Source: Schmidtea nova (taxonomy: Eukaryota). From it: DNA of 64,000 nucleotides. The translations under genes were made by a program, and so were the position numbers. Shown piece by piece: positions 44,607 through 62,165 of this stretch (its first letter is position 1; each line of letters begins with the position of its first letter). Location of the stretch: contig CM097882.1 of assembly GCA_044892505.1 (NCBI GenBank), positions 124,558,001-124,622,000 on the forward strand, written 5' to 3'. Below the pieces are notes generated by a model that saw only the letters and a program-made list of their open reading frames with translations, made no database searches and had not been told where the DNA came from.

Positions 44607-45413
44607 CTATTCCGTTTTATGGAAGTTGCAGGGCTTAGTGCATTTAAAAGCCTTTTCACCAAATTTGTATTGAAAATAGCAATGATTTTCATTTATTAAA
44701 TTGTTTCTCGCTTGTTTTTCTGGACTTTTGTCTCGATAATTATTGTATCTGTTTAGCGAGTTTGACCTGTTTATGTTGTATTGATTTGGTGAATGGTCTC
44801 TGTTGTAGTTTTGTCTGTTGTATCTTTCAGGAATTGAATTTGAATTGTTATTTTGCCTGTAGCATTTTTCTTTAATTTCGGCCAGTTCCGCTTTAATTTG
44901 TTTGTTTTCGACTATGATTTCATCAAATTTGCCTATTAGGGTGTTTAATAGTTTGTTCATGGTTTCATTTGTTTCGCTATATTTGTTGTTTGGTTGATTA
45001 TTGTAGTTTGTTTCGTTTTTGTTGTAGTTTTGGGTGCTGCAAGTAGTCGGATAAATTTCTTCGTTGATTTTATCCGCTATGTCAGCGAGTGTTTCGACAT
45101 CGGCGTTTTTGCTGGCAGCAAGGATCCGCCTGATTTCTGGTGGCATTGATCTCAAAAAGAATTTTTTAACTAGTTCATTTGAACCTGAGTTTGTGATATT
45201 TGGTTGCAAATATTCTTGTTTTTGTTTTAATTGTCTGAGGAAATCGGTGGGTTTATTGTCACCTAAGTGAGTGTTGTTGAGGCAAGATTCGAGCATTTGC
45301 CGTCTGTTTATTTTATTTTTGTTCGTCAGGATGTTGCACAGTTTGTTAAAGGGGTCGTCATCCTTAGAAATTTCTTCTATTTGGTCCGTAATTTCATTTA
45401 ATTTGTTACTGGA
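44607..45413 (-). pseudogene. gag: Gypsy gag, 3' part (continues from 61138-60846)
   Basis: Removing the Polinton and one TSD copy gives ...CSNIIAALSSNKLNEITDQIEE...; C-terminal CYFQYKFGEKAFKCTKPC motif. Confidence 0.85.
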
Positions 45414-45469
45414 AGTAGAGTAGGGGGAGCGCCCAAGAACAGGAACAGACCCCCCTCCCCCCAAAAAAA

Positions 45470-46268
45470 TTTTTTTTGTTTAAATGAAGTGAATTTTTTA
45501 AATTTTTTATTTTGTTTAAATGAAGTGAATTTTTGAATTTTATTTTTTTTGTTTAAATGAAGTCAATTTAATTTATTATTTTGTTTAAATGAAGTATTTA
45601 TTTTATTTTTATTTATTTATTTTTATTTATTTTTATTTATTTTTAATTTATTTTTAATTTATTTTAATTTATTTTAATTTATATTTATTTTTAATAATTT
45701 ATTTTTAGTTTATTTTTAATAATTTATTTTTATTAATTTATTTTTATTTATTTTTAGTTTATTTTTATTTATTTTTATTTTATTTTTATTTATATTTAAT
45801 AATTTATTTTAATAATTTATTTTAATAATTTATTTTTAATTTATTTTTAATTTGTTTTTAATAATTTATTTTTATATTTATTTTTAATTTAATTTTTAAT
45901 TTATATTTATTTATTTTAATTTATATTTAATAATTTATATTTAATAATTTATATTTATTTTTAATTTATTTAAATTTAAATTTATTTTTATATTTTCGGT
46001 TCAGTTTGAATAATAATAATTATNNNNNNNNNNNNNNNNNNNNNNNNNNNNNNNNNNNNNNNNNNNNNNNNNNNNNNNNNNNNNNNNNNNNNNNNNNNNN
46101 NNNNNNNNNNNNNNNNNNNNNNNNNNNNNNNNNNNNNNNNNNNNNNNNNNNNNNNNNNNNNNNNNNNNNNNNNNNNNNNNNNNNNNNNNNNNNNNNNNNN
46201 NNNNNNNNNNNNNNNNNNNNNNNNNNNNNNNNNNNNNNNNNNNNNNNNNNACTTAGAAAAATTTTTAA

Positions 46269-46313
<45 letters not shown>

Positions 46314-46480
46314 TATTATTATTATTAACTTAGAAAAAACTTTGAAAAATTTTTAAAATAATAATAATAAACTTTGAAAAAACTTAGAAAAATAATAATA
46401 ACTTAGAAAAAACTTTGAAAAATTATGAAATAAAGAACAACTAAATCACAAAACTTTGAAAAATTATGAAATAAAGAACA
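45470..46480. repeat. Left subterminal region: 4x TTTGTTTAAATGAAGT, an almost pure A/T tract, an N gap, (AAT)n and short repeats
   Basis: Seen directly in the sequence. Confidence 0.85.
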
Positions 46481-46499
46481 ACTAAATCACAAAACTTTA

Positions 46500-46885
46500 T
46501 TATAAATTATAAATGTCGTTATAATATGCTTTACGCATTTCTGACATTAAGATATGCACCGAATGATCTCTTTTAAAATCGTGACAGCATGCACATCCGT
46601 TTACACAGGATACTCTTAGTGAATCATTGCAAACTATGCAATTTTCAACGCACTTGACTCCAGCTCCTAGCACCATATCATAGTGAATCTCAAGTAATTG
46701 TTCGATATTGATCCCAGTAAGCTTGTATAGCTTATGAACCAATAACTCTGGTGCACAGTAATCCAAAGAATCTTTTATTTTTGGATATAATTCTTGAATT
46801 TTCTTCAGGATCACTTCAAATAAATAAGCTAAATAAAAAATATTAATAATATAGTTAATTAAAAATAATACTTACTTTTAGACAT
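46500..46885 (-). CDS. Cys/His-rich protein (112 aa), two exons (46885-46876, 46828-46500)
   Basis: ATG TCT AAA A|GTAAGT...TTTAG|CT TAT supplies an ATG and keeps the frame; CxxxCxxC...CxxxCxCCH...H..H. Confidence 0.75.
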
Positions 46886-46920
46886 TTTCAAAAATATGGA
46901 TTTGTAAAATAACAATGTAT

Positions 46921-47403
46921 TTAAACAAAATTAAATAATAAATCGAGATATTTTTCATCAATTAAATCATTATTGATTAATGAATTAATATAATTTTTAA
47001 TTTCATTTACTTGATTAAAATAATCCAATGTTTTAATTCCTAATATTACAACTTTTCCACTTGAAAAAATATTAATACAAATTGGGTTATAATTTATTAA
47101 TCTCAAAGCTGGAAATATTTTGGGTTCGTACCAGCACTCTGTTTTATTTTGCAATTCGTATAAATTTATGGATTTACCCATATCCAGTGTTATAGTGATC
47201 GATTGAATTTTTAAATCGGAAATTTTATATTTCAAATCATCTGGTTTTAACGGTTGCTTACATCCCATTACGCGACATTTTCCCGATCTGAAAAATAAAA
47301 TAGGGTACTTCCCGCTCCTATCTATAACTTGCTGAGGTTTCCCAACAGGAAATATCATGTTTGGAACTAAACACTTGCCCTTATAATTAATGTTACTTAT
47401 CAT
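46921..47403 (-). CDS. TATA-binding protein (TBP)-like protein, viral
   Basis: Two TBP-type repeats: ILFFRSGKCRVMGCK and DLKIQSIT...YEPKIFPALRL...INIFSSGKVVILGIK, versus TBP LIFSSGKMVCTGAK and DFKIQN...YEPELFPGL...LIFVSGKVVLTGAK. Confidence 0.85.
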   Translation of the reverse strand: MISNINYKGKCLVPNMIFPVGKPQQVIDRSGKYPILFFRSGKCRVMGCKQPLKPDDLKYKISDLKIQSITITLDMGKSINLYELQNKTECWYEPKIFPALRLINYNPICINIFSSGKVVILGIKTLDYFNQVNEIKNYINSLINNDLIDEKYLDLLFNFV

Positions 47404-47459
47404 TTTTATAAATTGAATAAATATAAACAATATTAAATTAATTAATTAATTAAATAAAA

Positions 47460-48083
47460 ATGGAATTAAGAAATGATGCAGTTTATCAAATAGTGGGCCC
47501 GAGTGGTAGTGGAAAAACATTATTTGTATGTAAATTGTTGCAATCAAAAATGTTTAAATCTAAATTCAATAAAATTTACTGGCATAGAGGAGCTGATGAA
47601 GAACATGGACTGACTCAAGATCAATTCTATAAATTAAAAATGACAATTATAAAAGGGTTTGATAAAAACTGGTCATCTAGATTACGACAAGGCGATGTTA
47701 TAATTATCGATGATTTGTACCAAGAAGCAAATAAAGAAAAAGATTTTAATAATTTATTCACAAAAATTAGTAGACATTTAGGAGTTACTGTAGTTTTCAT
47801 TACTCAAAATTTATTTCATCAAGGTGGTAGTCACAGAACTCGTAATTTAAATGTTCAATACTTGGTTATATTCAAAAACCCAAGAGATGCTACAATTATT
47901 GATTTTCTAGCAAGACAAGCTTACCCTAATGATCGGAAATTCTTAATTAATTCATTTCAAGATGCTACTAAAGTTCCTCATGGATATTTATTCTTTGATT
48001 TTACTCAACAATGTCCTGACGATTTACGTATCCGAACGGATATATTTAACGAAAAAGGAGTCACGGTTTATAAACAAAATTGA
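47460..48083 (+). CDS. A32/FtsK-like genome packaging ATPase
   Basis: Walker A GPSGSGKT, Walker B VIIIDD, ISRHLGVTVVFITQNLF. Confidence 0.93.
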   Translation: MELRNDAVYQIVGPSGSGKTLFVCKLLQSKMFKSKFNKIYWHRGADEEHGLTQDQFYKLKMTIIKGFDKNWSSRLRQGDVIIIDDLYQEANKEKDFNNLFTKISRHLGVTVVFITQNLFHQGGSHRTRNLNVQYLVIFKNPRDATIIDFLARQAYPNDRKFLINSFQDATKVPHGYLFFDFTQQCPDDLRIRTDIFNEKGVTVYKQN

Positions 48084-48104
48084 AAACAAATAAATGAAAT
48101 AATA

Positions 48105-48266
48105 ATGTCATTTAAAAAAGTAATTGTCAAGTTAAATAAAGAAGCTGTTCAAAAAGCTGATCAAAAACTACTTAAAAAAGTTGATCAAAAATCTAAATTA
48201 GTTAAAAAAGTTGTCAAAAAGGTTGGTAAAAAAAAGAAACAAGTAAAGAAGTGGATAAAATTATAA
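48105..48266 (+). CDS. 53-aa lysine-rich small protein (candidate DNA-condensing core protein)
   Basis: MSFKKVIVKLNKEAVQKADQKLLKKVDQKSKLVKKVVKKVGKKKKQVKKWIKL; 21 of 53 residues are Lys; fills the gap in a compact gene cluster. Confidence 0.7.
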   Translation: MSFKKVIVKLNKEAVQKADQKLLKKVDQKSKLVKKVVKKVGKKKKQVKKWIKL

Positions 48267-48296
48267 ACGAAATAAATATATACAAAAATCTTAATC

Positions 48297-48626
48297 ATGA
48301 AATTTGAACGTAGTTTACCGTATTTTAATGCTTTGGTTAAAGCTCCAACAAATAAGCGAATGATAATTTTACAAGCTTTCCCACCCTTTGTTATTGATGA
48401 TTTACTTGAAATCGTTTTTAATATTGTTCATGGTAATGTAAATATTAGTAGATCAAAGAAAATTGAACTACAAAAACATAAAAATTCACTTTTTTCATTA
48501 GTAAATACCAAAAATAGAAATCTTATGCGAAAAATAATATATAAACAAAAGGGTGGGTTTCTCGGTACATTAATTCCAATAGTATTATCAGCAATAAGCG
48601 CAATCTCATCTTTAAGAAATGGGTAA
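48297..48626 (+). CDS. Conserved small Polinton protein with an adenovirus pX-like C-terminus
   Basis: EIVFNIVHGNV core and QKGG|FLGTLIPIVLSAISAI, resembling adenovirus pX MRGG|ILPLLIPLIAAAIGAV. Confidence 0.7.
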   Translation: MKFERSLPYFNALVKAPTNKRMIILQAFPPFVIDDLLEIVFNIVHGNVNISRSKKIELQKHKNSLFSLVNTKNRNLMRKIIYKQKGGFLGTLIPIVLSAISAISSLRNG

Positions 48627-48688
48627 TAAAATTTCTGAACCGAATAAACATAATATAGATTTAAATATTTTAACAAATTGTTGTATTA

Positions 48689-49777
48689 ATGAAGAAAATC
48701 ATGAAGAATATAAAAACGATATGGACAAACCCAAAAGATCCCGATGGTTTTGGTTCAGTCAAAAAATTGGTAAAAAGAATAAAAAGTTCAAAGAATGAAA
48801 CTCAGAAATGGTTATCTGATCAATTGGCATATAGTTTAAATAAACCAATGTTGAAAAGATTTCCTACACGGAAATATAAAACTTTTGGGGGTAACGATTT
48901 ATGGTAAATGGATTTGATGGAAATGATTCCTTATTCTAAAATTAACAAGGGTTACAAATATATTTTGACTTGTATTGATGTTTTTAGCCGTTATGCACGA
49001 GCTATTCCAACAAAAACTAAATCTGCTAATGAAATGGCTGAGACTATTGAATCTTTATTTAAAGATGGGAAGCCACGTAATTTACAAACTGATTTGGGTA
49101 AGAAATGAAATTAAATTATTTAATTATTTATTTTTAATTTAGGAAAAGAGTTTTATAACAGCAAAGTAAAAGAAGTGATCAAAGGAATCAATCATTATTC
49201 TGTATTTTCTCAATTCAAAGCTGCTCATGTTGAAAGATTAATTCGTACTTTAAGAGATCGTTTGAAAAAGTATTTTGTGTATCAAGGTAACAAAACATGG
49301 ATAAGTGTTTTACCGAAAATTATTTTCAGTTACAATCGTTCACCGCATTCGGGATTAAATAAAATGAAACCTATCGATGTATATTCAAATAATAATTTTG
49401 ACGGATGGATAAAAGATAGATTAAAATCAATTAATAAAAAACCGAAATATAAAGTAGGTGATTATGTGAGAATGAGTAAAATCAGTGCTTCTCTCTTCAT
49501 CAAAAATTTTGATAGTAATATGAGTGATGAAGTATATCAAATCTCAAATGTTGATACTAATCAAAATCCTGTCATGTATACTATTTCCGATCATGAAAAC
49601 AATGTAATCGAAGGGAAATTCTACGAACAAGAACTTCAAGTTATTCCAGCTCCCACAGTTTTTAGAATTCAAAAGATTTTAAAAACCAAAACTGATGGGA
49701 AATATAAACAATATTACGTTAAATGGCATGGCTATGAAACTCCAAGTTGGATATCTGAAAAACAATTGATTAAATAA
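48689..49777 (+). pseudogene. int: Retroviral-type (rve) integrase with C-terminal chromodomain; one intron (49098-49142) and one premature TAA (48905-48907)
   Basis: DDE motifs W*MDLM, LQTDLG|KEF and HVERLIRTL; chromodomain YYVKWHGY...SWI; splicing GTAAG...TTTAG restores DLGKEFYN. Confidence 0.92.
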
Positions 49778-49782
49778 ATATT

Positions 49783-50820
49783 ATGAAAGAAAACCAGTTT
49801 TATATGATTTTGCCTAGCAATGCATGTCCTCTTATTTATCCTAATAATGAAGCTAGTAATTTTAATGTAGAATTTCAAAATCCGATTTATTTAAATAGTA
49901 ATGACGATTGGGAAGTTGCTTTGATTGATTTTACTTTTGTGTATAATTTATTTCCGTATTATAGTAATTCTTTTATTCAAATTGAAACTAAAAGAGAAAT
50001 TCAAGAAATTAGTTATTTGAGAATTAATAATCAAAATAAAACAATTCAAGTTATAGTTTCTCAACCTAGTTCAGACACTGATGTATTTATTGAAAAATAT
50101 AATTATTTAGTGATTGTTTGCCCACATGTTCCATTTAAAAGTACATTTCCAGATCTTGAACATGCAAAAAGTTTTGGATTGGAAAATATATCAATTACAA
50201 GTGAAAATGATCATTGTCGTTTAAAATTACCAAAATTCACGAATGATAATAGTCTTGAACAATTTGGAATTTTAATAAATTATGACATTAAAACTGTTAA
50301 TGATTATTATTTTCAAGATGAATTATTCATAACGTCATTACCGGAATTACAAGGATATTTAATGAAAATTAATCCATGGCCATTTAAAGAATTGAAACTT
50401 GTCAATAATGAATTGGTTAAAATTATTCTTCAGGATAATATTTCAAAAATTACTTTTGATTCAAATTTAACCAAATCTCTGGGTCTACAGAAACAAACAT
50501 ATACTGATACAGAAATAATTGGTGTAAAAATCCCCAAAATTTTACAACTTCATCAGCAAATGTTCATTTACAGCAACATTATTGAACCAGTAACTGTTGG
50601 AGATGTACGAGTTCCCCTCCTTAAATCAATTTGGATCAAGAAATATGACCAAGGTGAAGTTGTACAAATTGAAATAAAGAATCCAATGTATTTGCCGATT
50701 TCAACATCAACTATAAACAACATTGAAATCAATATTCGTGATGACAGTGGAAAATTAATTAAATTTTCAAAAGATACAAAGACTCATTTGACTCTACATT
50801 TTCGTAAAATAAATGATTAA
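49783..50820 (+). CDS. Minor capsid (penton-like) protein 1
   Basis: FYMILPSN...WEVAL...FIYSNIIEPVTVGDVRVPLL...NNIEINIRDDSG...LTLHFR. Confidence 0.88.
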   Translation: MKENQFYMILPSNACPLIYPNNEASNFNVEFQNPIYLNSNDDWEVALIDFTFVYNLFPYYSNSFIQIETKREIQEISYLRINNQNKTIQVIVSQPSSDTDVFIEKYNYLVIVCPHVPFKSTFPDLEHAKSFGLENISITSENDHCRLKLPKFTNDNSLEQFGILINYDIKTVNDYYFQDELFITSLPELQGYLMKINPWPFKELKLVNNELVKIILQDNISKITFDSNLTKSLGLQKQTYTDTEIIGVKIPKILQLHQQMFIYSNIIEPVTVGDVRVPLLKSIWIKKYDQGEVVQIEIKNPMYLPISTSTINNIEINIRDDSGKLIKFSKDTKTHLTLHFRKIND

Positions 50821-51838
50821 AAAAGATTTTTATGTTAATTTACCAGGCAATTCTTGTCCATTGACACATCCCAATAATAAAGCTGGAAAATTCAATGTTG
50901 AATATCAAAACCCAATTTATTTGGATGGTAGTTGGGAAGTTGCTCTTATGGATTTTACTTTTGTATACAATGAATTTCCATTTTATAATAGTTCAAGTAT
51001 AAAATTTATTAGAAATGAATTACATTCTAGTTATGAATATTTCAATTTTAACCAACAAAAGAAAGAATATGATATAAGTCACGATTCTAATTATTATTTA
51101 ATGTATATTGATGGTAATATTTTAAATGTAAATTGTAAATATTTTCCATTTCAAATAATATTTGATAGTGTTGATGAAGCTAAAAAAAAATTAGGGTTTC
51201 AAGAAAAAGCTGTGACATTTAATGATGAATTAAACAAAATTAAAATTCCAGCAAATGAAAATAAAAAACTTGATGATACTATACGATTTACTATAACTTA
51301 TACTTTTCCTGTTGAATACACAGATAATTTCAAAGACGATTTAATAATAAATAATCTTGCTGAATTATCTGATCAAATTGAAACTTTTTATCCACATCCA
51401 TTTAAAGTGATTGATATTAAAGAAGGAAAATTAATCAAATTAATTCTTGAAGATGATATAACTAGTGTAAAATTTAGTAGGAATTTAGCAAATTCATTAG
51501 GATTAGTTGAACAAGAATTCTTTGACAAAATTATTGATGGCGTATATTATCCACAAGTTTTAAAACTTCATCAACAAATGTTCATCTATACGAATATTAT
51601 TCAACCAATTCTTGTTGGTGACATGTCAGTTCCCCTATTGAAATGTGTTTGGGTTGAAAAACATGAAAAGGGTGATTTGGTTCAAATTGTTGAGAAAAAT
51701 CCAATGTATTTTCCGGTCAGTTCCACATATATAAACAATATTGAAATCAATATTCGTGATGACAGTGGAAAAATAGTTAAATTTGCAAAAGAAGACAAAA
51801 CTTACTTGACATTACATTTCCGTAAAATAAATGAATAA
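50813..51838 (+). CDS. Minor capsid (penton-like) protein 2, tandem paralog
   Basis: Same N- and C-terminal motifs as 49783-50820 with a divergent middle. Confidence 0.88.
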   Translation: MIKKDFYVNLPGNSCPLTHPNNKAGKFNVEYQNPIYLDGSWEVALMDFTFVYNEFPFYNSSSIKFIRNELHSSYEYFNFNQQKKEYDISHDSNYYLMYIDGNILNVNCKYFPFQIIFDSVDEAKKKLGFQEKAVTFNDELNKIKIPANENKKLDDTIRFTITYTFPVEYTDNFKDDLIINNLAELSDQIETFYPHPFKVIDIKEGKLIKLILEDDITSVKFSRNLANSLGLVEQEFFDKIIDGVYYPQVLKLHQQMFIYTNIIQPILVGDMSVPLLKCVWVEKHEKGDLVQIVEKNPMYFPVSSTYINNIEINIRDDSGKIVKFAKEDKTYLTLHFRKINE

Positions 51839-52238
51839 TCCAGATATTATCAGTTTATATAGCAACAGCCAATCAGGTGGAGAATTACCGTATTTTGTAG
51901 GTAAGCAATATGGAACTGGATGGTTGAAAACGATAGGTAGATTTGCATTACCAATTCTTAGACGTATTGGAAATTTTGGTATGAAAACTGCCAATGATGT
52001 GTTAAATAATAATTCAAAGATTTTACCTGCACTAAAATCCAATGCTATTTCTGAAATTAAAGATTCATTGCCCGATGTGATTCATCATTTGCCACAAGTA
52101 ATTAGTAAAGTAACTGATGTGTTTAACGAAAATAAAACTGAAAATAAACAAAATGGCGGAATTCTTAAACGTAAAAGAAATATGAAGAAACATATAAACA
52201 AAAGAATGAAAGGATATGGTACAATTTTTGAAAAATGA
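51831..52238 (+). CDS. Small Polinton core/membrane-active candidate protein (PZ-like)
   Basis: QSGG and QYGTG motifs followed by the amphipathic WLKTIGRFALPILRRIG; basic C-terminus with QNGG and KGYG. Confidence 0.65.
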   Translation: MNNPDIISLYSNSQSGGELPYFVGKQYGTGWLKTIGRFALPILRRIGNFGMKTANDVLNNNSKILPALKSNAISEIKDSLPDVIHHLPQVISKVTDVFNENKTENKQNGGILKRKRNMKKHINKRMKGYGTIFEK

Positions 52239-53461
52239 TTAGTGCAAAATCTGAATTATGTCTTTTTGATAGACCATCTCCTCAAGCAGTAATTGAACAT
52301 GGTGCATTTGAAGATATTTACCCAACAAATTCAATTACAGATGCTGGGACATCATCTATTCAATTTTACATCAACGGATCTCAAACTGAATATTTAGATT
52401 TGAACGATACTTTACTATCTCTTCAGGTCAAAGTTGTAAACAAATCGGGTGAAAATTTAGGATTGGATGCTGATGTTACTCCCAACAATTTCTTTTTCCA
52501 AACTCTTTTTAAAGAAGCAGAATTAATTTTCAATTCTACTAAAGTTGAAGGGGGAAATGATACATTTACACACAAAGCCATGATTGAAACTATTCTCAAC
52601 TACAATAGTGATACAAAACACACATCTTTAACTCCAATAGGATACAATGACCATGATCTTACTAGAAAAGCATGGATTGCAAAATCAAAACCATTTTCAA
52701 TTTGTTCTCCATTACATTTCGATTTCATGGAACAACCCAAATATTTATTACCAGGTGTTAGTGTTCAAATTAAATTGACGAGATCAAATCCATCCAATAG
52801 TTTGACAAGCACAAAAATTGAACCTATAATTGAATTATTAGACGCAAAATTAATGGTTAGAAGAGTTCGAGTAGAACCATCAGTTTATGCTGGGCATCAA
52901 ATTGGACTTGGTACAAGAAATGCAATTTATCCAATAAGAAATAAGGAAGTTGTAGAATTTTCATTGCCAATGGGTTCTTCTTCGTTTTATAAGGAACAAA
53001 TCTTTGGCGATAGACGATTACCAAACTTTATTCTTGTAGCATTTCAAGGAAATAAAAGACATAGTGGTTCTTTTACTGAAACATATTCTATTTACGATTA
53101 TTTTAATGTCAAATCATTAACTTTATCGAAAGGAAGTGATTATCGTGAAAAATATTCTCAAGATTTTGAAAATGATAATTGTAGTACTAGTTATATGCAA
53201 TCTATTGTCCGTAACCTTGGTTACCTGAATAAGAGTATGAATTGTGGTATTTCTTTATCAGATTGGAAAAGCAAATATCCTTTTTTCACCTTCGTTTTGG
53301 CTCCAGATTTTGACCTAAATCAAAGTCAATTACCTCAACAAGGTAATCTAAGACTTGATATTAAATTTGGTACACCATTGACTGAATCAGTTTCTGTAAT
53401 TGTATATGGAGTTTTTGAAAAGGAATTACAAATTACAGCTAATAGAACAATATTGATTTAA
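52235..53461 (+). CDS. Double jelly-roll major capsid protein (PY)
   Basis: KSELCLFD...IQFYI...YLDLNDTLL...LHFDFMEQPKYLLPGVSVQIKL...GNLRLDIKFG...VIVYGVFE pattern and 408-aa length typical of Polinton MCP. Confidence 0.9.
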   Translation: MISAKSELCLFDRPSPQAVIEHGAFEDIYPTNSITDAGTSSIQFYINGSQTEYLDLNDTLLSLQVKVVNKSGENLGLDADVTPNNFFFQTLFKEAELIFNSTKVEGGNDTFTHKAMIETILNYNSDTKHTSLTPIGYNDHDLTRKAWIAKSKPFSICSPLHFDFMEQPKYLLPGVSVQIKLTRSNPSNSLTSTKIEPIIELLDAKLMVRRVRVEPSVYAGHQIGLGTRNAIYPIRNKEVVEFSLPMGSSSFYKEQIFGDRRLPNFILVAFQGNKRHSGSFTETYSIYDYFNVKSLTLSKGSDYREKYSQDFENDNCSTSYMQSIVRNLGYLNKSMNCGISLSDWKSKYPFFTFVLAPDFDLNQSQLPQQGNLRLDIKFGTPLTESVSVIVYGVFEKELQITANRTILI

Positions 53462-53512
53462 TTGAAAATTATTGGTTTAATATAAACTAATTTTAATAAA
53501 TTAATAAAGTAA

Positions 53513-53891
53513 ATGAAGTAAGATTTATTTTAAATAATTAAATTTTATTGATTTTAGTTCAATTCAGGTAGATCAGATTGCTAGAAAATTGATTGGATCG
53601 GAATTTCTAGGAGTTTTTCCTCTAGATAAAATACCGTATATAGATGTGAATAAAGCATTGATTGTCAATACTCAAACATCAAATCTCAAAGGCGAACATT
53701 GGCTTGCAATTTATAATAAACCCGATAAAATATACGTGTTTGATCCAATGGGATTTTATTATCCACCGATATTATTGAAAAAATTATCGTCAATGTTAAA
53801 ACCAATAGAATATAACAGAATTCGATATCAAAATCCTATGACAAAAACCTGTGGGCAACATTGTTTAGCTTGGCTAAAATATATGAAATAA
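53513..53891 (+). CDS. Adenain-like cysteine protease (112 aa), two exons (intron 53518-53557)
   Basis: ATG AA|GTAAG...TTTTAG|T TCA gives MNSIQVDQIARKLIGSEFLGVFP; catalytic GEHW, FDPMG, YQN and TCGQHC intact. Confidence 0.92.
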
Positions 53892-54004
53892 AATTTTTTA
53901 TTATAAAACGACTTTTATTATAAAACGACTTTTTCTATTTTTGGTATTCACTAATACAAAAGTGAATTTTTATGTTTGAATTTGTTAAATTATAGTTGAA
54001 AATA

Positions 54005-54665
54005 ATTTTAATATTGTAAAATATTAAATTAATTTTAAATTACATATTGTAAAATATTTAATTAATTTTAAATTACATATTGTAAAATATTTAATTAATT
54101 TTAAATTACATATTGTAAAATATTTAATTAATTTTAAATTACATATTGTAAAATATTTAATTTTAAATTACATATTGTAAAATATTTAAATTAAATTATA
54201 TTTAAAATAATTTCGTTTAAATAAACAACATTTTTAACAACAAGCCAACTTAAGTAAGTAAGTTTAATTTTTTATGAATATTTTTTAATTTTTTCATTAC
54301 AGATTTTTGAAATTATGCCAAACATTATTATGCCAATGAAATTTTCAAAGAAAATTATACCAAACAATGTTATACCAAACAATATTATGCCAAACAATGT
54401 TATGCCAATGAAATTTTCAAAGAAAATTATACCATCGATACTTCATGTTAAATGTAAGTATTTATATATTGACGAAATATATTATTATCAATTAAATGTT
54501 TATTTTTATAATTGATAGATTTTTATATGAATTTAATTAATTTTTATAATTGATAGATTTTTATATGAATTTAATTAATTTTTTATAATTGATAGATTTT
54601 TATATGAATTTAATTAATAATCGATAGATTTTTATATGGATTTAATTAATTTTTATAATAAATAT
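54005..54665. repeat. Internal non-coding spacer with 33-bp (about 6x), 15-bp-based and 38-bp (about 4x) tandem repeats
   Basis: ATATTGTAAAATATTTAATTAATTTTAAATTAC at 54011, 54044 and onward; ATTGATAGATTTTTATATGAATTTAATTAA at 54511, 54549 and onward. Confidence 0.9.
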
Positions 54666-54887
54666 ATTTTATAAATGATATATTTATATATTATTTTTAA
54701 AATATATTTAATGTAAATAAGAAAAAATCAATTAAAGAACAAATAAATTAAACAAGAGTTTATTCATGAAAATCATTAATTTTCCAAATAGGTTTTATCA
54801 CGTTTTCGGTTTGTTTAAATCCTTGTAAGATAATTTGAATTTGATACATTGAATTTTCATCTAATTTGCCTAAATCTGTTTCTTTTT

Positions 54888-55290
54888 TTACAGTTCATAT
54901 ATGTGAATTCCTCGTTGAATTGAATGTTCTTTATTTATTAGCATTAAAATTTCTGATAGATTCTTTCTATCAATTTCCCCGATTTTTCCAACCTGAATAT
55001 TGTATTGACATTGTTTCAATGTAACAGGTTCCTGTAAATAATATTAATTAGATTTTTATAATTTTTTAATTATTTACTTTGAATGAATATTTGATCGGAT
55101 ATTTCAAATACTCCATCGAGTATTGTAGAAATTGAACTGGTGGATTCAATGCCAAATTAGATGAAGAAATAGGATTTTCCTCAAGTATAATCTTCATTAT
55201 TTCTTGTTTTGTCATTCTTTTCGATTCTAGAAAAATAAATTAAAAAATAATCATTTAAAATTAATTAATCTTACTTTTAAGTTGATACAT
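54888..55290 (-). CDS. Hidden three-exon Polinton gene (102 aa, unknown function)
   Basis: Exons 55290-55275, 55226-55078 and 55031-54888 joined by 48- and 46-nt GT-AG introns give one open frame starting at ATG. Confidence 0.65.
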
Positions 55291-55573
55291 TTTTTAATGA
55301 TTATTTTAATTTTATAGGTCGTTTATATAGAAATTTTTAAATTATTTTGACCAATCATAATCAATAAATATATATTACGATATTTTGAAATGAATGTGTG
55401 TATACACACTTGATATACATCATTGATATTTTATCTTAATTTTTATCTTAATTTTTATCTTAATTTTTATCATTATTTTTATCATTATTTTTATATTATT
55501 TTTAAAATTTATAGGCAATTTATATCAAAAATATTGCAACTCCACAATTCATGATGTAAAATGCCATGAATTA

Positions 55574-58500
55574 ATGGAAAGATATTATGCATACCCTCAT
55601 AACTGTAAAACCTCCTACATTTGTCCTTTTTGCAAATCTACTTCGTCCTCTTCGTATATTGACTTTTACAATACTCATTGCGATCATTTAGATCAATTTA
55701 AAACATCTAAAAAATCAATTTTTAAATTACCGCTTAAAAGAAAATGTAATGAAAATAATTCAATCCCAATCAAAATTAACAAGTCAGATCTTACTGATGA
55801 TATTTCTTCAGTTGATCCTTCAGTTGTTCCTTCAGTTGATCCTTCAGATATAGTTGTAATTTCTGATGATGATGATGATGACATTCTTGGTAATGATACC
55901 ATTCCTGATGATAACATTCTTGATAATGATACCATTCCTGATGATGATAACATTCTTGATAATGATACCATTCTTGATGATAACATTCTTGATATAAATA
56001 TTCTTTCTGATTTTGTGGTTGTAGACACTTTTGATCCTATCGATAATATTCAAATTGGTGGTTCTTTTGATAAAATTTGTGACGATAAATACTCTTTAGT
56101 TCCTGAAGTACAGGTTGGTGGCTCCATTTTACCTGTTGTTAAATTTGATTTAAATAAATCACATGCTATAATGAAAATGATTGTAACTAACTTGAATTTA
56201 AAAAGCATGTTTGTACCTGATAATTTAATTAATAAATTAAATAATGTAATTGAAACGATGGGAACGGTTAAAATTCAATTTTGCATCGAAGTTGAGTTTG
56301 AAAAAGATGGTGCTTTTCAAACTATAGTTATTTCTAACTCTGCACAACCTGTCACAGATACCTTTATAGACGATGGCATTAATATTCTTAACGAAAAAAT
56401 TACATTAATTAATAATAGAGGTAGTAACTGGATAATTAATAAAATTAATGAAATCCATTTCATATTAACAAAATTTTCTGAGATTAGTAAGTTAATAGGT
56501 TACGGTGGTATTGACACTCCTGAATCTTTAAAGTCAAAACATTGTGTTGCAAATGTTCAGAATTCTGATGACTTGTGCTTTATATATTCTGTTTTAGTAA
56601 TTATTAAATATGATGAGATATCTGGTCGTAAAAATAAACATAGGATCAGTAATTACAATCTTTCAGATGTTAACTTTAGTCCTTCTGATTTGCCTATGCG
56701 TCTTTGCAATATCCCAAAGTTTGAAGCTAAAAACCCGGGATATGCGATTAATGTACTTTCATATGATGAATCTGGAATTCTAGACACTAAGCCTGAAGTT
56801 TTCAAACATCCGTGTATTGACATAATTCATAGGTCGAAAGTAGTAGACGGAATTCCTATTAACTTGATTCTTTTGCAAAATGGTGACTCTTTTCATTATA
56901 TAGCAGTAACCAATCTTGATAGGCTTTTAAATCTTGACAATAAATCAATATCTGGTACTCGTATTCAAAGTTTATGGTGCCATCGATGCTTGAATGGGTT
57001 TAGATATCAAGATTCTTTTGTTCGTCATCAAGAGTTGTGTTCTAAAAATCAATTAGGCACAACTCTATATACTTTGCCTAAAAATCCTTATTTGACATTT
57101 AGTAATTGGGGCAAAACAATTACTCCACCTTTTGTAGTTTACGCCGATTTTGAGGCAATCTTACCTGCTGATGATAAGTACTTTCAAAGACATGTCCCAA
57201 TATCTGCCGGTCTTTTACTTGTAAATAATTTCACTGGTGAAAAGATTTACAAGAGTTTCTTAGGTCTTGATTGCGTTACTAATTTTCTTGCTGAAATTAA
57301 CAATATAGGTGAAGAAATTGTTTTTCCTTTTTATAAAAACAATTACAAAAAACCACTTATTATGACATTCGATAATAAAAGATCTTTTGCCTCATCTACT
57401 AATTGTTATCTTTGTAAAAATCGTTTAGTTAATCCGGTTAGAGACCATGATCACTACACTGGTGAATTCTTGGGAGCTGCTTGTTTAAAATGTAATCTTA
57501 CTAGACAGATTCGTAAGGAACTACCGGTTATTTTTCATAATTTAAAAGGGTATGACATGCACCATATTCTTAAATATGGTTTGGCTAATTTTTCAACTTG
57601 GAAAATATCATGTATTCCAACAACTAGTGAAAAATTCCTTACTTTGTCTGCAAGAGTCGGCGATTTAACAATTAAATTCATCGATTCTTGTCAATTTATT
57701 AACTCCAGTTTAAATGATGCGGTTAAAACATTGACTTCATTACCTTTGACTAGATCTGAATTCACCGGGACTATTGTTGACTGTAAGGGTATTTTTCCTT
57801 ATGATTTTGCAACATCTTTAGAAATTCTTAACAACACTTATGAATTACCACCAATCTGGGAGGGTGTTAAGCAGGCTGAATATGACAAGGCATTAGTTAT
57901 TTGGAGGGAATCCCAGTGTCACACTCTGTGTGACTATATGATGGTCTACCTTAAACTGGATGTTTTTCTTCTTGCTGATTTCTTTCAACAGTTTAGGGCT
58001 AAATCTATAGCTCACAATAAACTTGAGCCTTTGAATTTTTTGGGGATTCCAGGTATGTCGTGGGCTTCTGCGCTTATTACCTTGGATGAACCTATTGAGT
58101 TGCTCCAGGATATGGAGATTTATAATTTTTTCGAAGGGGGGATCCGTGGTGGTTTGACATTTGTCAACAAGCACCATGTAGTATCCTCCGAAACGACTGA
58201 ACTTTTATACATTGACATAAATAATTTATACGGGTGGGCTTTAAGTCAAAAATTACCTTATGGTGAATTTAAATGGATCACTGATGAGAATAAATTAAAT
58301 AAATAAATTAAATTAATGGATACTGATTTGGCTATTTTGACTTATGGCGTGACTTTTGAAGTGGATCTTGAAATACCTTCAGAAATTCACGAAAAATTAA
58401 ATGATTTTCCGGTAGCAGCAGAGAAAATGTGTGCTCCGGGTTCAAAGGTTGAGAAGTTAATGCTGACGCATTATCCAAAGTTCAACTATGTTGTTCATTG

Positions 58501-59521
58501 GAGGCTTCTCAAGCTTTTTGTTTCTTTGGGTGTTAAAATAACACGAGTTCATCGGGCTGTTCAGTACAATCAGAAACCCATTTTTAAAAAATATATAGAT
58601 ACAAACACTGAACTTAGGGCAGCATCTTCTACAGCTTTAGATAAAAACTATTACAAACTCTTGAATAATAGTCTTTATGGAAAAACGGTTGAAAATCTTA
58701 AGAAACGACTCAATTTACGACTATGTAATTCACCATCAAAACTGATTACATATACTTCAAAACCTACCTTTAGAAAAACTTATAGAATTGACGATGACCT
58801 AGTTTCTGTCTTACTTAATAAGGACTCTGTGTGTTTAGATAGACCCAGTTACATTGGCCAAACTGTACTGGATTTATCTAAACTTAGGATGTATCAACTG
58901 CAGTATGAAGAATTACAAAAATATCGTAATGAATTCAACTGCGAAATTAACATCGTTGCTGGTGACACCGATTCATTTTTTCTTGAGATTAGAAATTGTA
59001 GGTTAGATGTTCTGTTACCTGCGAGGATAAGAGATAACTTACTTGACACTTCTAATTATGATCCGAATCACCCATTATACAGTAAGAACCTAGATTCCGT
59101 CATTGGTAAATTCAAAGACGAGAATAAAGGATTCAAGTATGATGAGTGGGTATTCCTTAGACCAAAGTGTTATAGTCTTTTAGGCGATGAAGAGTGCATT
59201 AAGGCTAAGGGTATAACATTGAAGGATACTAAACTGAATCATCAGTCGTATCTGGATTGTTATAATAATAATTCAATAGTTTCTGTTGATCAGTCGAGAA
59301 TAGTTAGTAAGAATCACCAACTCTTTACTAATAAATATTCGAAAATTGCCTTGACTAATCTTGATGATAAAAGACTTTGGGTTGATAAAAATGAAAGTCT
59401 TGCATACGGACATTATAAGGGATGTGGCTCGTTTATAGACCAATCAAAAGATCAGGTTGGTGTTCCAGTTTCAGATCCAGCTCTCAATTCAAATTATATA
59501 TCCAATTCAGATTTGTATTGA
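55574..59521 (+). pseudogene. polB: Protein-primed family B DNA polymerase (terminal protein, OTU-like, exonuclease with endonuclease VII-like insert, polymerase); one in-frame TAA at 58304-58306
   Basis: VYADFE, FHNLKGYD, YLKLDV, DHDHYTG...CLKCN, YIDINNLY, KLLNNSLYGK, AGDTDS, LRPKCY; both ORFs lie in the same frame. Confidence 0.95.
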
Positions 59522-60014
59522 ATAAAACTTTGTTAAAAAATAATTGGTTTCATTATATTTAGTTTTATATTTCTTTAGACTGTTATGTTTAATTGTTTTT
59601 AAAAATTTTATGTGTTATCCAGATTTGAATTGGTTTTATCGTTCAGGGTTTTCACCGATTAGTGTAATATTTTAAGGATTTGTGTAATTCGTTTTTATTT
59701 ATTGTAAAAATAATTGTTTTTGTTTACAAATATTAATAAATTTCATCTGTTCTTGCAGTTGCACTCTGTTGAATCGTCTTTAAAATTTTGACTATTGTCA
59801 CAATTCTCGAATTAATTCCATCTGTTTTCATAGTTGCCACATTCGATTTTCTAAAGTTATCAGTTAAAAAACAATTACTCAAAATGTTAGCCAGTACATT
59901 CAAACAAAAATTTCATTTAATTAAGTAAAGAACATGTTTTCGTTTGTGGTACGGATAATAATTAATATGTTGTGTATTTTGACGCTACCAACAGTAGTCA
60001 TGGGGGTTACACAA

Positions 60015-60801
60015 TGGTGTGTTTATCTTAGCAATAGTTACTTCAGGACTTAAATATTAACATGTGTGGTTACCTTAGCAATAGTTACAGGGAGACTATA
60101 CTTTAATGTGTGTATTTACCCCGGGACTATATATTGATCTGTGTGTTTACCTTAACTATATCTTCCCCAGGACTATATATTGATGTGTATGTGTTAACTT
60201 TAGCAACATCTGGCTATATGAATATATATATATATATATATTGATGTGTGTGTGTTTACCCTGGAAACAGGTTCCTCAGTGAATATATAATGATGTGTGT
60301 GTGTGTGTTTACCTTAACTACAGGTTCCTTGGGGACTCTTTATACGCGCGTGTTTATCTTAGCAACAGATTCCAATGCACTACACTTTAATGTGCGTATT
60401 TACCCGAGCAATATCTTCCCGGTAATTATATATTAATGTGTGTGCTTACCTTAGCAATAACTGCCTCGAGGAATATATTGATGTGTGTGTTAACCCTGGC
60501 AACAGGATCCTCGGGGAATATATATTAATGTGTGCTTACCCTAGCAACACCTGCATTGAGGAATATCTTGATGTGTGTATTTACCTTAGCAACATCTCCC
60601 CGGTAATTATATAGTAATGTGTGTGCTTACCTTAGCAATACCTGTCTCGAGGAATATTTTGATGTGTGTGTGTGTGTGTTTACCCTGGCAACAGGTTCAT
60701 CGGGGAATATATATATATTGATGTGTGTGCACGTTCACCCTGACAACACCTGAATTGAGGAATATCTTGATGTGTGTATTTACCCTAGCAACCGTTGCTA
60801 G
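60015..60801. repeat. Right subterminal array of about 17 units of ~45 bp, with a 4-unit higher-order repeat
   Basis: Consensus GTGTGT-TTACC(C/T)T(A/G)GCAA(C/T)A-variable-GGAATATATTGAT; unit starts at 60400, 60446, 60490, 60536, 60581. Confidence 0.9.
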
Positions 60802-60845
60802 TTGAAAAAAGTGGGGCTGTGCGCTCACTTTCCCCTACTACTGGA

Positions 60846-61138
60846 AAGTGCGGCTATAATGTTGGAGCACAGGGTTTTGAAGATTTTATTCCTGACAGGG
60901 TTAGTGTTAGTTTGGCAAGTTCCAGCCATTTTTGCGGAGTGCCATTTTTATCTGTAAAATAATTTGGTAAATTCGGTTTGGGATTAATTACGGAGTTAAT
61001 TGTGTGTGGGTTATCTGGGTTGAAATAATAATGGCTATTTTTTCTTTGTAATCGGGTGTTTTCCTCGTTGTTATGTGGTGCTTTTGGGTTTGGTTGTTCA
61101 TTGTTGGTCGAGGTAAATTGGTTTTGGTTTAATGCCAT
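60846..61138 (-). pseudogene. gag: Gypsy gag, 5' part (1-nt frameshift near 60880)
   Basis: MALNQ...PNLPNYFTDKNGTPQKWLELAKLTL; continues at 45413 across the TSD. Confidence 0.8.
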
Positions 61139-61347: not shown

Positions 61348-62165
61348 TATTATGTTGAGATATAACGTTTTTAATGTGTATTTAGATTGAAGATGCGTAT
61401 TGTGAGAGAGATTTGTTGACCCCAGCCGAGTCACCAGTAAAAGTGTGTCGGGACAACTGGGGTGCGGGTTATGTACGTGCTTCTAGGTGTGATTGAGAGC
61501 GTGTGTGTATAATGTATGCTGTTTAATAACAAAAAAAAATAACCAAAATTTTTATTAAGTATTTATAAATTATAACAACACGTACTCACGATTTTGCAAG
61601 GGAAGTTTGTTAGGAATTAATATTTCTTTCGTAAAAAAATATTCTCCAATAGTTTCTTTCGTTTCTTTTTTTTTGTTTGTTTCCTTTTAATTTAGTTGGT
61701 TTAGGTATTTCTGTAAATATTCCTCCAATATTTTCTATGGTTGGTTTACTGTCGTTTCTGTAGGATTTAGTTTTTTTAGATTTCAATCGATTTGATAATT
61801 TGTTTTTGTATCTTCGTGATTTTTATAATTCGTTTTTCTATTTGTCTTGGTTAATTGTCACTTTAATAATTCGTTAATTACTAATTTTCATTTTTTTAAA
61901 AATCCATTTTCTTTATATGTTTCTTTAGTTTCCAATTCCAATGTCTATTCCTTTTTACGTCTCTATCTTTATTTTCTTTAGCGATTTAAATTTTAATTCC
62001 TTAGTAATATTTTTTGACGATTTCTGAGATTGATTTTCTTTAATTCCGATTTATAACTTTTTAATTTTTAATTTTATAATAATAATCAAAGTGGTAACAA
62101 TAATAATAATAATAAAAATAAAGATAATAACAATAATAAAAATGACTATGATAAAAATATACAGC
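61348..62165 (-). repeat. 5' LTR of the split Gypsy element (outer end cut by the 62166 repeat)
   Basis: Adjacent to the PBS; 61655-62165 matches 42863-43455. Confidence 0.8.

What the first reader, a model, noticed from the sequence alone, without database searches (positions are those of the whole stretch)
45408..60845. Complete, young Polinton-like endogenous virus with a non-canonical gene set
Seen: the order is left end, <-Cys-rich, <-TBP-like, ATPase->, Lys-rich->, pX-like->, INT->, mCP1->, mCP2->, PZ-like->, MCP->, PRO->, repeat spacer, <-spliced orphan, pPolB->, motif array, right end. The TSD is perfect and all virion genes are intact. Established: the core set defines Polintons/adintoviruses. 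Inference: a TBP homolog, micro-introns, a duplicated penton and missing long TIRs together suggest a distinct lineage that uses host Pol II and the spliceosome while supplying its own promoter factor.
Basis: partly seen in the sequence, partly recalled or inferred. Interest (0 to 1): 0.85.

Follow-up and report, generated by a model that had tools for sequence, protein, structure and literature searches.

The report
Decayed endogenous Polinton virus with TBP gene
This is a real 15.4-kb Polinton/adintovirus-like virus integrated in an AT-rich eukaryote genome. It belongs to a large, unnamed environmental lineage that carries its own small TATA-binding-protein-like gene and one to three vertex (penton) genes. 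This copy is broken and rearranged, not intact.

Summary
Window 45414-60839 is one insertion with a 6-8 nt target duplication. It splits a retrotransposon gag-like gene whose two halves resume within about 3 residues of each other.

**Genes confirmed**
- By Pfam: TBP-like, A32-type ATPase, rve+chromo integrase, adenain-like protease, protein-primed PolB.
- By predicted fold: a double jelly-roll capsid protein and two penton paralogs.

- The "non-canonical" gene set is the norm for a lineage seen in about 90 metagenome loci. TBP occurs in 12 relatives, and they carry 1-3 penton genes.
- The "orphan" and the Cys-rich ORF both have homologs in relatives.
- The copy is not intact:
  - Integrase has 4 in-frame stops.
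  - PolB has 1 in-frame stop.
  - One accessory gene lies in three frame pieces.
  - PolB lies on the opposite strand compared with 11 distinct relatives.
  - Long TIRs, present in the two relatives whose ends I could see, are absent here.
- Micro-introns have no support. Relatives' genes are uninterrupted, the code is standard, and two stops sit in aligned columns.

**Open points**
- A relative encodes Bcl-2, so the host is probably an animal, but I could not identify it.
- A 2021 paper lists TBP in a figure legend for related "MELD viruses".

Verdict: a new variant of a known kind, of moderate interest.

The parts
45408..45413 (.). Left copy of the target-site duplication (ACTGGA; identical stretch is 45407-45414)
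   Evidence: Read directly. Flank homology to uninterrupted gag-like proteins starts at about 45416.
45414..46499 (.). Left arm, non-coding. It holds a short terminal motif (AGTAG AGTAGGGGG), a 36-nt x4 array (45470-45618), an AT-rich 10-nt array (45595-45990), the assembly gap 46024-46250, then (AAT)n and 11/41-nt repeats.
   Evidence: No frame crosses the gap. No long inverted match to the right end.
46500..46814 (-). Cys-rich small ORF (104 aa), a lineage accessory gene of unknown function
   Evidence: No Pfam match. Its N-terminal 44 residues are 45% identical to an ORF in the same left-arm position of relative L088, E 6e-8.
46921..47430 (-). TBP-like gene. The mechanical ORF is 169 aa; relatives start at the internal Met, giving about 160 aa (46921-47403). 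It has one clear TBP repeat plus a short N-terminal half.
   Evidence: Pfam TBP E 1.3e-16. 27 relatives of about 145-160 aa. A profile of them hits solved TBPs at E 7e-21, but only through profile positions 60-146. Homologs in 12 related loci.
47460..48083 (+). Genome-packaging ATPase (A32/FtsK-HerA type)
   Evidence: Pfam Pox_A32 28.3 bits, above the cut-off. 57-75% identical in relatives.
48105..48266 (+). 53-aa Lys/Arg-rich protein (40% K+R), candidate DNA-condensing core protein
   Evidence: A 53-60 aa ORF with 38-47% K+R sits in the same position in L088, L089, L001 and L085. The function is inferred.
48297..48626 (+). 109-aa protein with a conserved C-terminal GG + hydrophobic tail ('pX-like')
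   Evidence: Pfam Adeno_PX 25.6 bits against a cut-off of 25, but only 1 of 10 family members reaches it. GG is invariant in 10 of 10.
48689..49777 (+). Integrase (rve core + C-terminal chromodomain), BROKEN: 4 in-frame stops, no frameshift. The span is about 40-60 nt longer than in close relatives.
   Evidence: Pfam rve and Chromo on the pieces. Stop counts. 15 of 15 relatives have 0 stops. The intact gene is 341-359 aa in L087-L089.
49783..50820 (+). Penton (vertex) protein, paralog 1, 345 aa
   Evidence: AlphaFold2 pLDDT 94.6. Foldseek best hits are mavirus penton (E 1e-8), Sputnik, PBCV-1 penton and adenovirus penton base. 4084 cluster representatives at E<=1e-3.
50813..51838 (+). Penton protein, paralog 2, 341 aa. 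It is 45% identical to paralog 1; the ends are conserved and the middle has diverged.
   Evidence: Tandem pairs also occur in L014, L028, L011 and L087; there are three in L088.
51831..52238 (+). 135-aa conserved small protein ('PZ'), with two Q-x-G-G motifs and a basic tail. Probably a minor virion or core protein.
   Evidence: 44-61% identical in relatives, always between penton and MCP. No Pfam match. Motifs.
52235..53461 (+). Major capsid protein, double jelly-roll, 408 aa
   Evidence: 135 relatives, best 81% identity. AlphaFold2 pLDDT 88.7. Foldseek against PDB gives E 1e-15 to 1e-13 to iridovirus, PBCV-1, mavirus and Sputnik MCPs. The best BFVD hit is a Cotesia sesamiae bracovirus protein, 23% identity, E 4.5e-26.
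53535..53891 (+). Adenain-like cysteine protease. The frame is open, full length relative to relatives, and has the H, D, Q and C residues. There is no ATG in the frame.
   Evidence: Pfam Peptidase_C5 24.9 bits, above the cut-off of 21.3. Relatives align from about 53544. No ATG here, nor in 18 of 44 relatives.
53892..54762 (.). Repeat spacer: 33-nt x5.7, 15-nt, 38-nt x4.8 and other AT-rich tandem arrays
   Evidence: No relative's ORF matches it.
54763..55239 (-). Three collinear pieces in changing frames cover most of a protein that is contiguous in relatives.
   Evidence: A profile of relatives' proteins hits the three pieces in order, E 4e-8, 3e-4 and 0.1. The gene is contiguous in L006, L085, L088 and L089.
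55520..59521 (+). [quoted passage not shown] The N-terminal region has an Asp-rich tandem repeat, and there is an Endonuclease-VII-like zinc insert.
   Evidence: Pfam DNA_pol_B_2 E 8e-9 and Endonuclease_7 E 4e-4. Stop count. On the opposite strand in 11 distinct relatives.
59522..60839 (.). Right arm: non-coding stretch, then a 45/91/181-nt motif array (about 59990-60792), ending in ...CCCCTACT
   Evidence: Relatives' TIRs also hold tandem arrays.
60840..60845 (.). Right copy of the target-site duplication
   Evidence: Flank homology to gag-like proteins ends at 60857.
44607..45413 (-). Neighbour: C-terminal part of the interrupted retrotransposon gag-like gene (DUF7041 type)
   Evidence: 50% identical to residues 72-319 of P0132.
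60846..61138 (-). Neighbour: N-terminal part of the same gag-like gene
   Evidence: 67% identical to residues 22-69 of P0132.

Best explanation
Window 45414-60839 is one integrated copy of a Polinton/Maverick (adintovirus-like) double-stranded DNA virus.

HOW IT GOT THERE. Its rve-type integrase inserted it into a gag-only LTR retrotransposon, duplicating about 6 nt of target.

WHAT IT BELONGS TO. It is a member of a large lineage known so far only from metagenome and sequencing-run assemblies. The shared plan of that lineage has two parts:
- A tight, same-strand capsid block: packaging ATPase, small basic protein, GG-tailed small protein, integrase with chromodomain, one to three pentons, small protein, double jelly-roll capsid protein, adenain-like protease.
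- A protein-primed PolB on the opposite strand, with variable terminal arms. The arms hold host-derived accessory genes: a compact TBP-like protein in nearly every member seen, and sometimes Bcl-2, MATH/TRAF or RING.

INFERRED, NOT SHOWN.
- The virus replicates by protein priming from repeat-bearing inverted termini and builds an icosahedral capsid matured by the protease.
- The TBP-like protein steers, or competes for, the host's nuclear transcription machinery at viral promoters.

STATE OF THIS COPY. It is a decaying provirus.
- The capsid block is still open.
- Integrase has 4 in-frame stops and PolB has 1.
- One accessory gene is in three frame pieces.
- PolB is flipped relative to 11 distinct relatives.
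- 1.6 kb of tandem repeats lies at the junction between the capsid block and PolB.
- The two ends no longer match beyond a short terminal motif.
For: - Domain identities.
- Capsid and penton folds.
- Target duplication and collinear gag flanks.
- Conserved gene order in about 30 longer related loci.
- TBP-like family and its match to solved TBPs.
- Bcl-2 in L088.
- Stop counts, with uninterrupted relatives.
- Standard code, with TAA ending 9 of 12 genes.
- Accessory gene in pieces.
- TIRs present in relatives but not here.
- Adintovirus traits in the literature (chromodomain integrase, pX-like tails, Bcl-2 homologs, and TBP and TRAF in related MELD viruses): PMC8502044.
Against: - The host genome was not identified and no sibling copy could be examined, so 'decaying' rests on comparison with relatives that are only 50-81% identical.
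- The assembly gap sits in the left arm, so part of a left terminal repeat could be unread.
- Gene order in the arms is plastic in the lineage, so the flipped PolB might be a sub-lineage arrangement rather than damage.
- The N-terminal half of the TBP-like protein does not align to a TBP repeat, so a working DNA saddle is not shown.
- No OTU domain was detected in PolB, and the pX likeness is marginal. Strict membership in Adintoviridae is therefore not shown.
Confidence: 0.8

Rival explanations
1. The copy is intact and active. On this view the interruptions are tiny spliceosomal introns or stops that are read through, and the gene order is native to a young sub-lineage.
For: - All five stops leave the frame unchanged, with no frameshift in integrase or PolB.
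- Three of the four integrase stops fall in a stretch that relatives lack, and that stretch is a multiple of three long.
- The capsid block of about 6.4 kb has no stop at all.
- The target duplication is perfect.
Against: - At least one integrase stop and the PolB stop lie in columns that align codon for codon with relatives on both sides, so no intron can remove them.
- TAA, the codon at four of the five stops, also ends 9 of the 12 genes exactly where relatives end, so the code is standard.
- 15 of 15 relatives have no stop in integrase.
- No tool predicted an intron and relatives share none.
- The accessory gene changes frame twice.
Confidence: 0.07
2. The locus is an assembly chimera. On this view the left end (up to the gap at 46024) and the body belong to different places or different elements, joined only by scaffolding.
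For: - A gap of estimated length lies 610 nt inside the left end.
- The two ends carry unrelated subterminal arrays and no long TIR.
- The window has 11 gaps.
Against: - The left flank and the right flank are the two halves of one gag-like gene, meeting within about 3 residues.
- An identical 8-nt stretch lies at both junctions.
- LTR-like direct repeats bracket the whole.
- The gene next to the gap (Cys-rich, then TBP) sits as in relative L088.
Confidence: 0.05
3. The TBP-like protein is not a promoter factor for the virus. Instead it is a decoy that ties up host TBP partners or TATA boxes, shutting down or skewing host transcription.
For: - It is compact, about 145-160 aa against a core of about 180 aa.
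- Only its C-terminal repeat aligns to TBP.
- It sits among host-derived counter-defence-type accessory genes (Bcl-2, MATH/TRAF, RING) in the variable arms.
Against: - The motifs of the C-terminal repeat are strongly conserved across 21 members, including both Phe-bearing segments and the SGK strand. An SGK-type strand also survives in the N-terminal half. This fits a DNA-binding fold kept under selection.
- Nothing here tests binding or partners.
Confidence: 0.3

Closest known systems
Polintons/Mavericks, that is adintoviruses (class Polintoviricetes; Starrett et al. 2021, PMC8502044)
   Same: - Protein-primed PolB.
- rve integrase with a chromodomain.
- Double jelly-roll capsid protein, penton, A32-type ATPase and adenain-like protease.
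- A target duplication of about 6 bp.
- A small protein with a pX-like tail.
- Bcl-2 in a relative.
- The best viral fold match of the capsid protein is a protein of Cotesia sesamiae bracovirus. I take it, from memory, to come from a Maverick.
   Different: - No OTU domain detected in PolB.
- A TBP-like gene in nearly every member of the lineage.
- One to three tandem pentons.
- The capsid protein finds only unnamed metagenome proteins by sequence.
- This copy lacks long TIRs and has PolB on the same strand as the capsid block.
'MELD viruses with adintovirus-like PolB' from Blastocystis, rumen, green-alga and fungus datasets (Starrett et al. 2021, section 3.4, Fig. 5)
   Same: - They combine adintovirus-like PolB and integrase with virion proteins not recognisable by sequence.
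- The figure legend lists TBP and TRAF genes, as in this lineage (L001 has MATH/TRAF next to TBP).
   Different: - I could not see the figure or the sequences, so identity of the lineages is untested.
- Those were assigned to non-animal hosts, whereas a relative here has Bcl-2.
Mavirus and other virophages
   Same: The penton fold is closest to the mavirus penton (E 1e-8). The capsid fold, protease, ATPase, rve integrase and PolB module are shared.
   Different: - There is no sign of dependence on a giant virus.
- The element is integrated in a retrotransposon of a cellular genome.
- TBP-like and Bcl-2 genes point to nuclear host machinery.
- No relatives were found in IMG/VR.
Cellular and archaeal TATA-binding proteins; TBP-like genes of giant viruses and mirusviruses
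   Same: The C-terminal repeat matches solved TBPs at E 7e-21, including the FP..L and SGK motifs.
   Different: The protein is about 150 aa. The first repeat is shortened and not alignable by HMMER. The gene is carried by a 15-kb virus.

Membership tests
Polinton/Maverick (Polintoviricetes) | [quoted passage not shown] | tested here: met
   Pfam DNA_pol_B_2 E 8e-9 on the C-terminal piece. 43-63% identical to relatives' PolB. The gene carries 1 in-frame stop.
Polinton/Maverick (Polintoviricetes) | Retrovirus-like (rve) integrase | tested here: met
   Pfam rve on a piece (E 1e-6, 29.4 bits, below the whole-protein cut-off because it is a piece). The full genes of relatives carry rve. The gene is broken by 4 stops.
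Polinton/Maverick (Polintoviricetes) | Double jelly-roll major capsid protein and single jelly-roll penton | tested here: met
   Fold searches of confident models.
Polinton/Maverick (Polintoviricetes) | A32/FtsK-type packaging ATPase and adenain-like cysteine protease | tested here: met
   Pox_A32 28.3 bits and Peptidase_C5 24.9 bits, both above their cut-offs.
Polinton/Maverick (Polintoviricetes) | 6-bp target-site duplication | tested here: met
   ACTGGA occurs at both junctions, within an identical 8-nt stretch. The bounds are fixed independently by gag collinearity.
Polinton/Maverick (Polintoviricetes) | Terminal inverted repeats of hundreds of bases | tested here: not met
   Only a short terminal motif is shared. 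A local alignment of the terminal 80 nt is matched by 99 of 500 shuffles, and no long inverted pair was found. The feature is met in relatives L001 (about 0.2 kb) and L085 (about 1 kb). An assembly gap lies in the left arm.
Adintoviridae as described by Starrett et al. 2021 | Integrase with a chromodomain | tested here: met
   Pfam Chromo E 0.001 on the C-terminal piece, below the cut-off. The same domain is on record for L088's integrase.
Adintoviridae as described by Starrett et al. 2021 | OTU-like domain in PolB | tested here: not met
   No Pfam match in the N-terminal part of PolB, even at E 10. A profile or fold comparison was not run.
Adintoviridae as described by Starrett et al. 2021 | Virion accessory protein with a pX-like C-terminal domain | tested here: inconclusive
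   Adeno_PX 25.6 bits against a cut-off of 25 in the window protein only, 1 of 10 family members. The GG + hydrophobic tail is conserved.
Adintoviridae as described by Starrett et al. 2021 | Animal host | not testable with these tools
   The host was not identified. Indirect hint: a Bcl-2 homolog in relative L088.
TATA-binding protein family (PF00352) | Two tandem TBP repeats forming the DNA saddle | tested here: inconclusive
   One repeat is clear (Pfam E 1.3e-16; profile against PDB E 7e-21, positions 60-146). The N-terminal 60 residues keep an SGK-type strand but do not align.
Polinton-like viruses (PLV) and virophages | Typically no protein-primed PolB plus rve integrase pair; virophages depend on giant viruses | tested here: not met
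   Both genes are present. There are no IMG/VR relatives. The element is integrated in a cellular retrotransposon.
Catalogued repeat families (Repbase, Dfam) | Same architecture already on file | not testable with these tools
   No such library is on hand. The protein databases gave no named relative.

The most novel reading that the evidence does not exclude
The window holds a decayed member of an undescribed, globally spread, family-level lineage of adintovirus-like viruses, probably of small invertebrates. Two traits would set the lineage apart. It routinely carries its own compact TBP, which redirects nuclear promoter recognition. It also builds capsids from one to three different penton paralogs. 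Among 15-kb nuclear DNA viruses, a virus-encoded general transcription factor would be a new strategy.
Probability: 0.3. Interest if true: 0.7.

Novelty: new variant of a known kind. Interest (0 to 1): 0.5.

Why it matters
Polintons are thought to be the ancestors of, or close kin to, adenoviruses, virophages and giant viruses. How these small nuclear viruses get their genes transcribed is unknown.

A TBP-like gene kept in nearly every member of a widespread lineage gives a concrete handle on that question. The variable number of penton paralogs bears on how vertices of such capsids are built.

The lineage is abundant in public metagenomes. The penton search found 4084 cluster representatives, though that count may include pentons of other Polinton groups. 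Yet the protein searches returned no informative name for any relative, and IMG/VR held none. This locus ties the lineage to a cellular genome.

The copy itself is an ordinary decaying provirus.

Tried and rejected
SEARCHES THAT FOUND NOTHING
- Exact look-up of the capsid protein: not on record.
- IMG/VR scan with the capsid alignment: no relative.
- tRNA and Rfam scans of the window for host clues: nothing.
- Pfam on other window ORFs: only retrotransposon domains.
- Search with the flanking gag: 5 unnamed metagenome proteins. The host stays unknown.
- Literature search for the sample accessions: nothing.
- Sequence searches of penton and PolB pieces against solved structures: nothing.
- Cys-rich ORF against the RING protein of L084: unrelated.

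HYPOTHESES REJECTED
- Variant genetic code as the explanation of the in-frame stops. TAA ends 9 of 12 genes where relatives end, and relatives have no in-frame stops.
- Rumen 'hybrid virophages' as the family. They lack integrase and penton.
- A conserved gene after the protease (X). It is absent from the window, but also from L089, so I did not count it as a loss.
- The missing ATG of the protease as a break. 18 of 44 relatives also lack one.

LEFT OUT ON PURPOSE
- I did not pick stretches to bridge the stops. The pieces were searched apart.


Full report
**1. Gap test (done first)**

The run of N at 46024-46250 lies in the non-coding left arm.
- To its left is an AT-rich 10-nt array.
- To its right are (AAT)15 and short 11- and 41-nt repeats.
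- The only 'ORF' across it is made of X, so no frame is at stake.

Continuity cannot be read from the letters. Indirect support for the join comes from four observations:
- The left flank holds the C-terminal part of a gag-like gene and the right flank holds its N-terminal part.
- Uninterrupted relatives of that gene (P0132, P0133) align to the right flank up to about residue 69 and to the left flank from about residue 72.
- LTR-like direct repeats (42866-43291 and 61668-62079, 91.6% identical) bracket the whole.
- Cys-rich(-) then TBP(-) then ATPase(+) follow the gap, the same order as in relative L088.

**2. Observation**

Pfam matches:

| Gene | Family | Result |
|---|---|---|
| TBP-like | TBP | E 1.3e-16 |
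| ATPase | Pox_A32 | 28.3 bits |
| Integrase (pieces) | rve and Chromo | matched |
| Protease | Peptidase_C5 | 24.9 bits |
| PolB | DNA_pol_B_2 | E 8e-9 |
| PolB | Endonuclease_7 insert | matched |
| 109-aa protein | Adeno_PX | 25.6 bits (cut-off 25), marginal |

The capsid genes have no Pfam match, so I folded them.
- The 408-aa protein (pLDDT 88.7) matches double jelly-roll capsid proteins of an iridovirus, PBCV-1, mavirus and Sputnik at E 1e-15 to 1e-13.
- Its best match among predicted viral structures is a Cotesia sesamiae bracovirus protein, 23% identity, E 4.5e-26. I take this protein, from my own knowledge, to come from a Maverick carried by that bracovirus.
- The 345-aa protein (pLDDT 94.6) matches the mavirus penton (E 1e-8), then the Sputnik and PBCV-1 pentons and the adenovirus penton base.
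- Its neighbour is a 45% identical paralog. The penton duplication is therefore real.

The junctions carry ACTGGA within an identical 8-nt stretch. With that duplication the element runs 45414-60839 and reads AG...CT at its tips.

**3. The lineage**

The capsid protein has 135 relatives at E<=1e-3. Almost all come from metagenome or sequencing-run assemblies. None carries an informative name; the few labels read 'hypothetical protein'. The best is 81% identical. The penton has 4084 cluster representatives. IMG/VR holds none.

I read 79 JGI loci and ten ENA or Logan loci (L001-L004, L084, L085, L087-L089).

The shared plan on one strand is: ATPase, a 53-60 aa basic protein (38-47% K+R), the GG-tailed protein, integrase, penton(s), a small protein, capsid protein, protease. 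PolB lies on the other strand.

Lineage traits:
- A TBP-like gene is present in 12 relatives: L001, L005, L006, L014, L026, L029, L031, L056, L084, L085, L088, L089. It lies in either arm and in either orientation.
- Penton genes number one in most relatives, two in L014, L028, L011 and L087, and three in L088.
- Arm genes include MATH/TRAF (L001), RING (L084) and Bcl-2 (L088; Pfam E 5e-10).
- The 'orphan' has contiguous homologs in L006, L014, L085, L088 and L089.

The gene set is therefore the lineage's normal one.

**4. State of this copy**

Counts only.
- Integrase: 4 in-frame stops, no frameshift. The span is about 40-60 nt longer than in close relatives.
- PolB: 1 in-frame stop.
- Integrase in 15 of 15 relatives: no stops.
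- Accessory gene: three collinear pieces in changing frames.

The code is standard. TAA ends 9 of 12 genes and TGA ends 3, at the points where relatives end.

At least one integrase stop and the PolB stop lie where the pieces abut codon for codon against relatives. No intron can explain them. No tool predicted an intron and relatives share none, so I made no spliced model.

The capsid block from ATPase to protease is open. The protease frame has no ATG, but neither do 18 of 44 relatives, so I do not count that as a break.

PolB is on the same strand as the capsid block only here, against 11 distinct relatives. Between the protease and PolB lie 1.6 kb of tandem repeats and the broken accessory gene.

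The ends share only a short motif: AGTAGGGG at offset 0 on one end and offset 5 on the other. Their subterminal arrays differ. Relatives L001 and L085 have repeat-bearing TIRs of about 0.2 and 1 kb.

**5. The TBP-like protein**

Its 27 relatives are all about 145-160 aa. A profile of 21 of them hits solved archaeal and eukaryotic TBPs at E 7e-21 to 1e-14. The match runs only through profile positions 60-146, which align to either TBP repeat.

The N-terminal half keeps an SGK-type strand but is too short for a full repeat.

That it serves as the virus's promoter factor is an inference. A decoy role is a live rival.

**6. Comparison with what is known**

Starrett et al. 2021 (PMC8502044) describe adintoviruses with:
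- a chromodomain integrase,
- pX-like tails on virion accessory proteins,
- Bcl-2 and IAP homologs,
- Cys-rich 'Oncoid' ORFs.

They also list TBP and TRAF genes in a figure legend for 'MELD viruses with adintovirus-like PolB' from Blastocystis, rumen, algal and fungal datasets. There is no discussion of these genes in the text I read.

The rumen hybrid virophages (PMC4409740) lack integrase and penton, so they are a different family.

I could not test Repbase or Dfam. No OTU domain was found in PolB.

**7. Host**

The host was not identified. The window is AT-rich (GC 0.16-0.37), full of retrotransposon remains, and has 11 gaps.

Bcl-2 in a relative suggests an animal host for the lineage. This rests on the established view that Bcl-2 family proteins are animal proteins, plus viral captures. 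Related contigs come from many sample series whose habitats I could not look up.

**8. Slips and limits**

- Early in my own reasoning I named places of stops from ORF bounds.
- One search printed the bounds of the stop-to-stop pieces of the broken accessory gene.
- I list no break places in this report.
- I fetched metagenome contigs of relatives by look-up before the Bcl-2 gene suggested that they may be viruses of animals. I stopped fetching at that point. I used what was held only for gene order, counts and identities.

**9. Verdict**

This is a real, bounded, integrated Polinton/adintovirus-like virus. It is partly decayed and rearranged. It belongs to a large lineage, unnamed in the protein searches, whose hallmark is a compact TBP-like gene and a variable number of pentons. 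It is a new variant of a known kind. Interest 0.5.

Noticed in passing
window 42866-43470 and 61668-62180: Direct repeats, 91.6% identical over 430 nt and continuing further. They bracket the interrupted gag-like gene. They look like the LTRs of a gag-only retrotransposon about 3.9 kb long, into which the virus inserted.
   Followed up: partly
window 12394-13324 and 26674-27605: A 932-nt inverted duplication, 98% identical, encoding RT-RNase H domains. These are two copies of one LTR-retrotransposon family in opposite orientation, 13 kb apart.
   Followed up: partly
window 4826-7894 (+): A 1023-codon open frame with a retrotransposon gag domain and two zinc knuckles. It is unusually long for a gag.
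   Followed up: partly
window 2923-3928: Tandem array of a 56-nt unit, about 18 copies, up to 99% identical.
   Followed up: no
window 61-889: A 39-nt (13-codon) periodic repeat inside an open frame. No Pfam match.
   Followed up: no
window 48297-48626 and 51831-52238: There are three Q-x-G-G motifs in the two small virion-block proteins. The GG of the 109-aa protein is invariant in 10 of 10 relatives. These may be maturation sites for the adenain-like protease.
   Followed up: partly
L088 3563-3940 (-), 6353-9377 (+): This relative carries a Bcl-2 homolog next to TBP and three tandem penton paralogs. L001 carries a MATH/TRAF gene and L084 a RING gene in the same arm.
   Followed up: partly
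window 55806-56000: Asp-rich 18/33-nt tandem repeat inside the N-terminal part of PolB. Relatives' PolB aligns only from about residue 187 on.
   Followed up: no
L084 2848-3010: A 58-nt inverted-repeat pair, 91% complementary, 47 nt apart. Its arms begin AGTAGTAG, like the tips of the window element. It could be a miniature derivative or an end junction.
   Followed up: no
window 20337-21005 and 34085-34247: Near-identical 180-nt repeats lie next to several assembly gaps (20095-21469, 33851-34383). The gaps seem to sit in a repeat family that the assembler could not resolve.
   Followed up: no
window 53535-53891 and 44 related loci: The protease frame has no ATG in the window or in 18 of 44 relatives. 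How it is expressed is unclear.
   Followed up: partly
L001, L084, L085 (all from ENA sample ERZ25039515): Three different members of the lineage lie in contigs of 22-32 kb from one sample, with flanking DNA. One host genome in that sample seems to carry several integrated copies.
   Followed up: no
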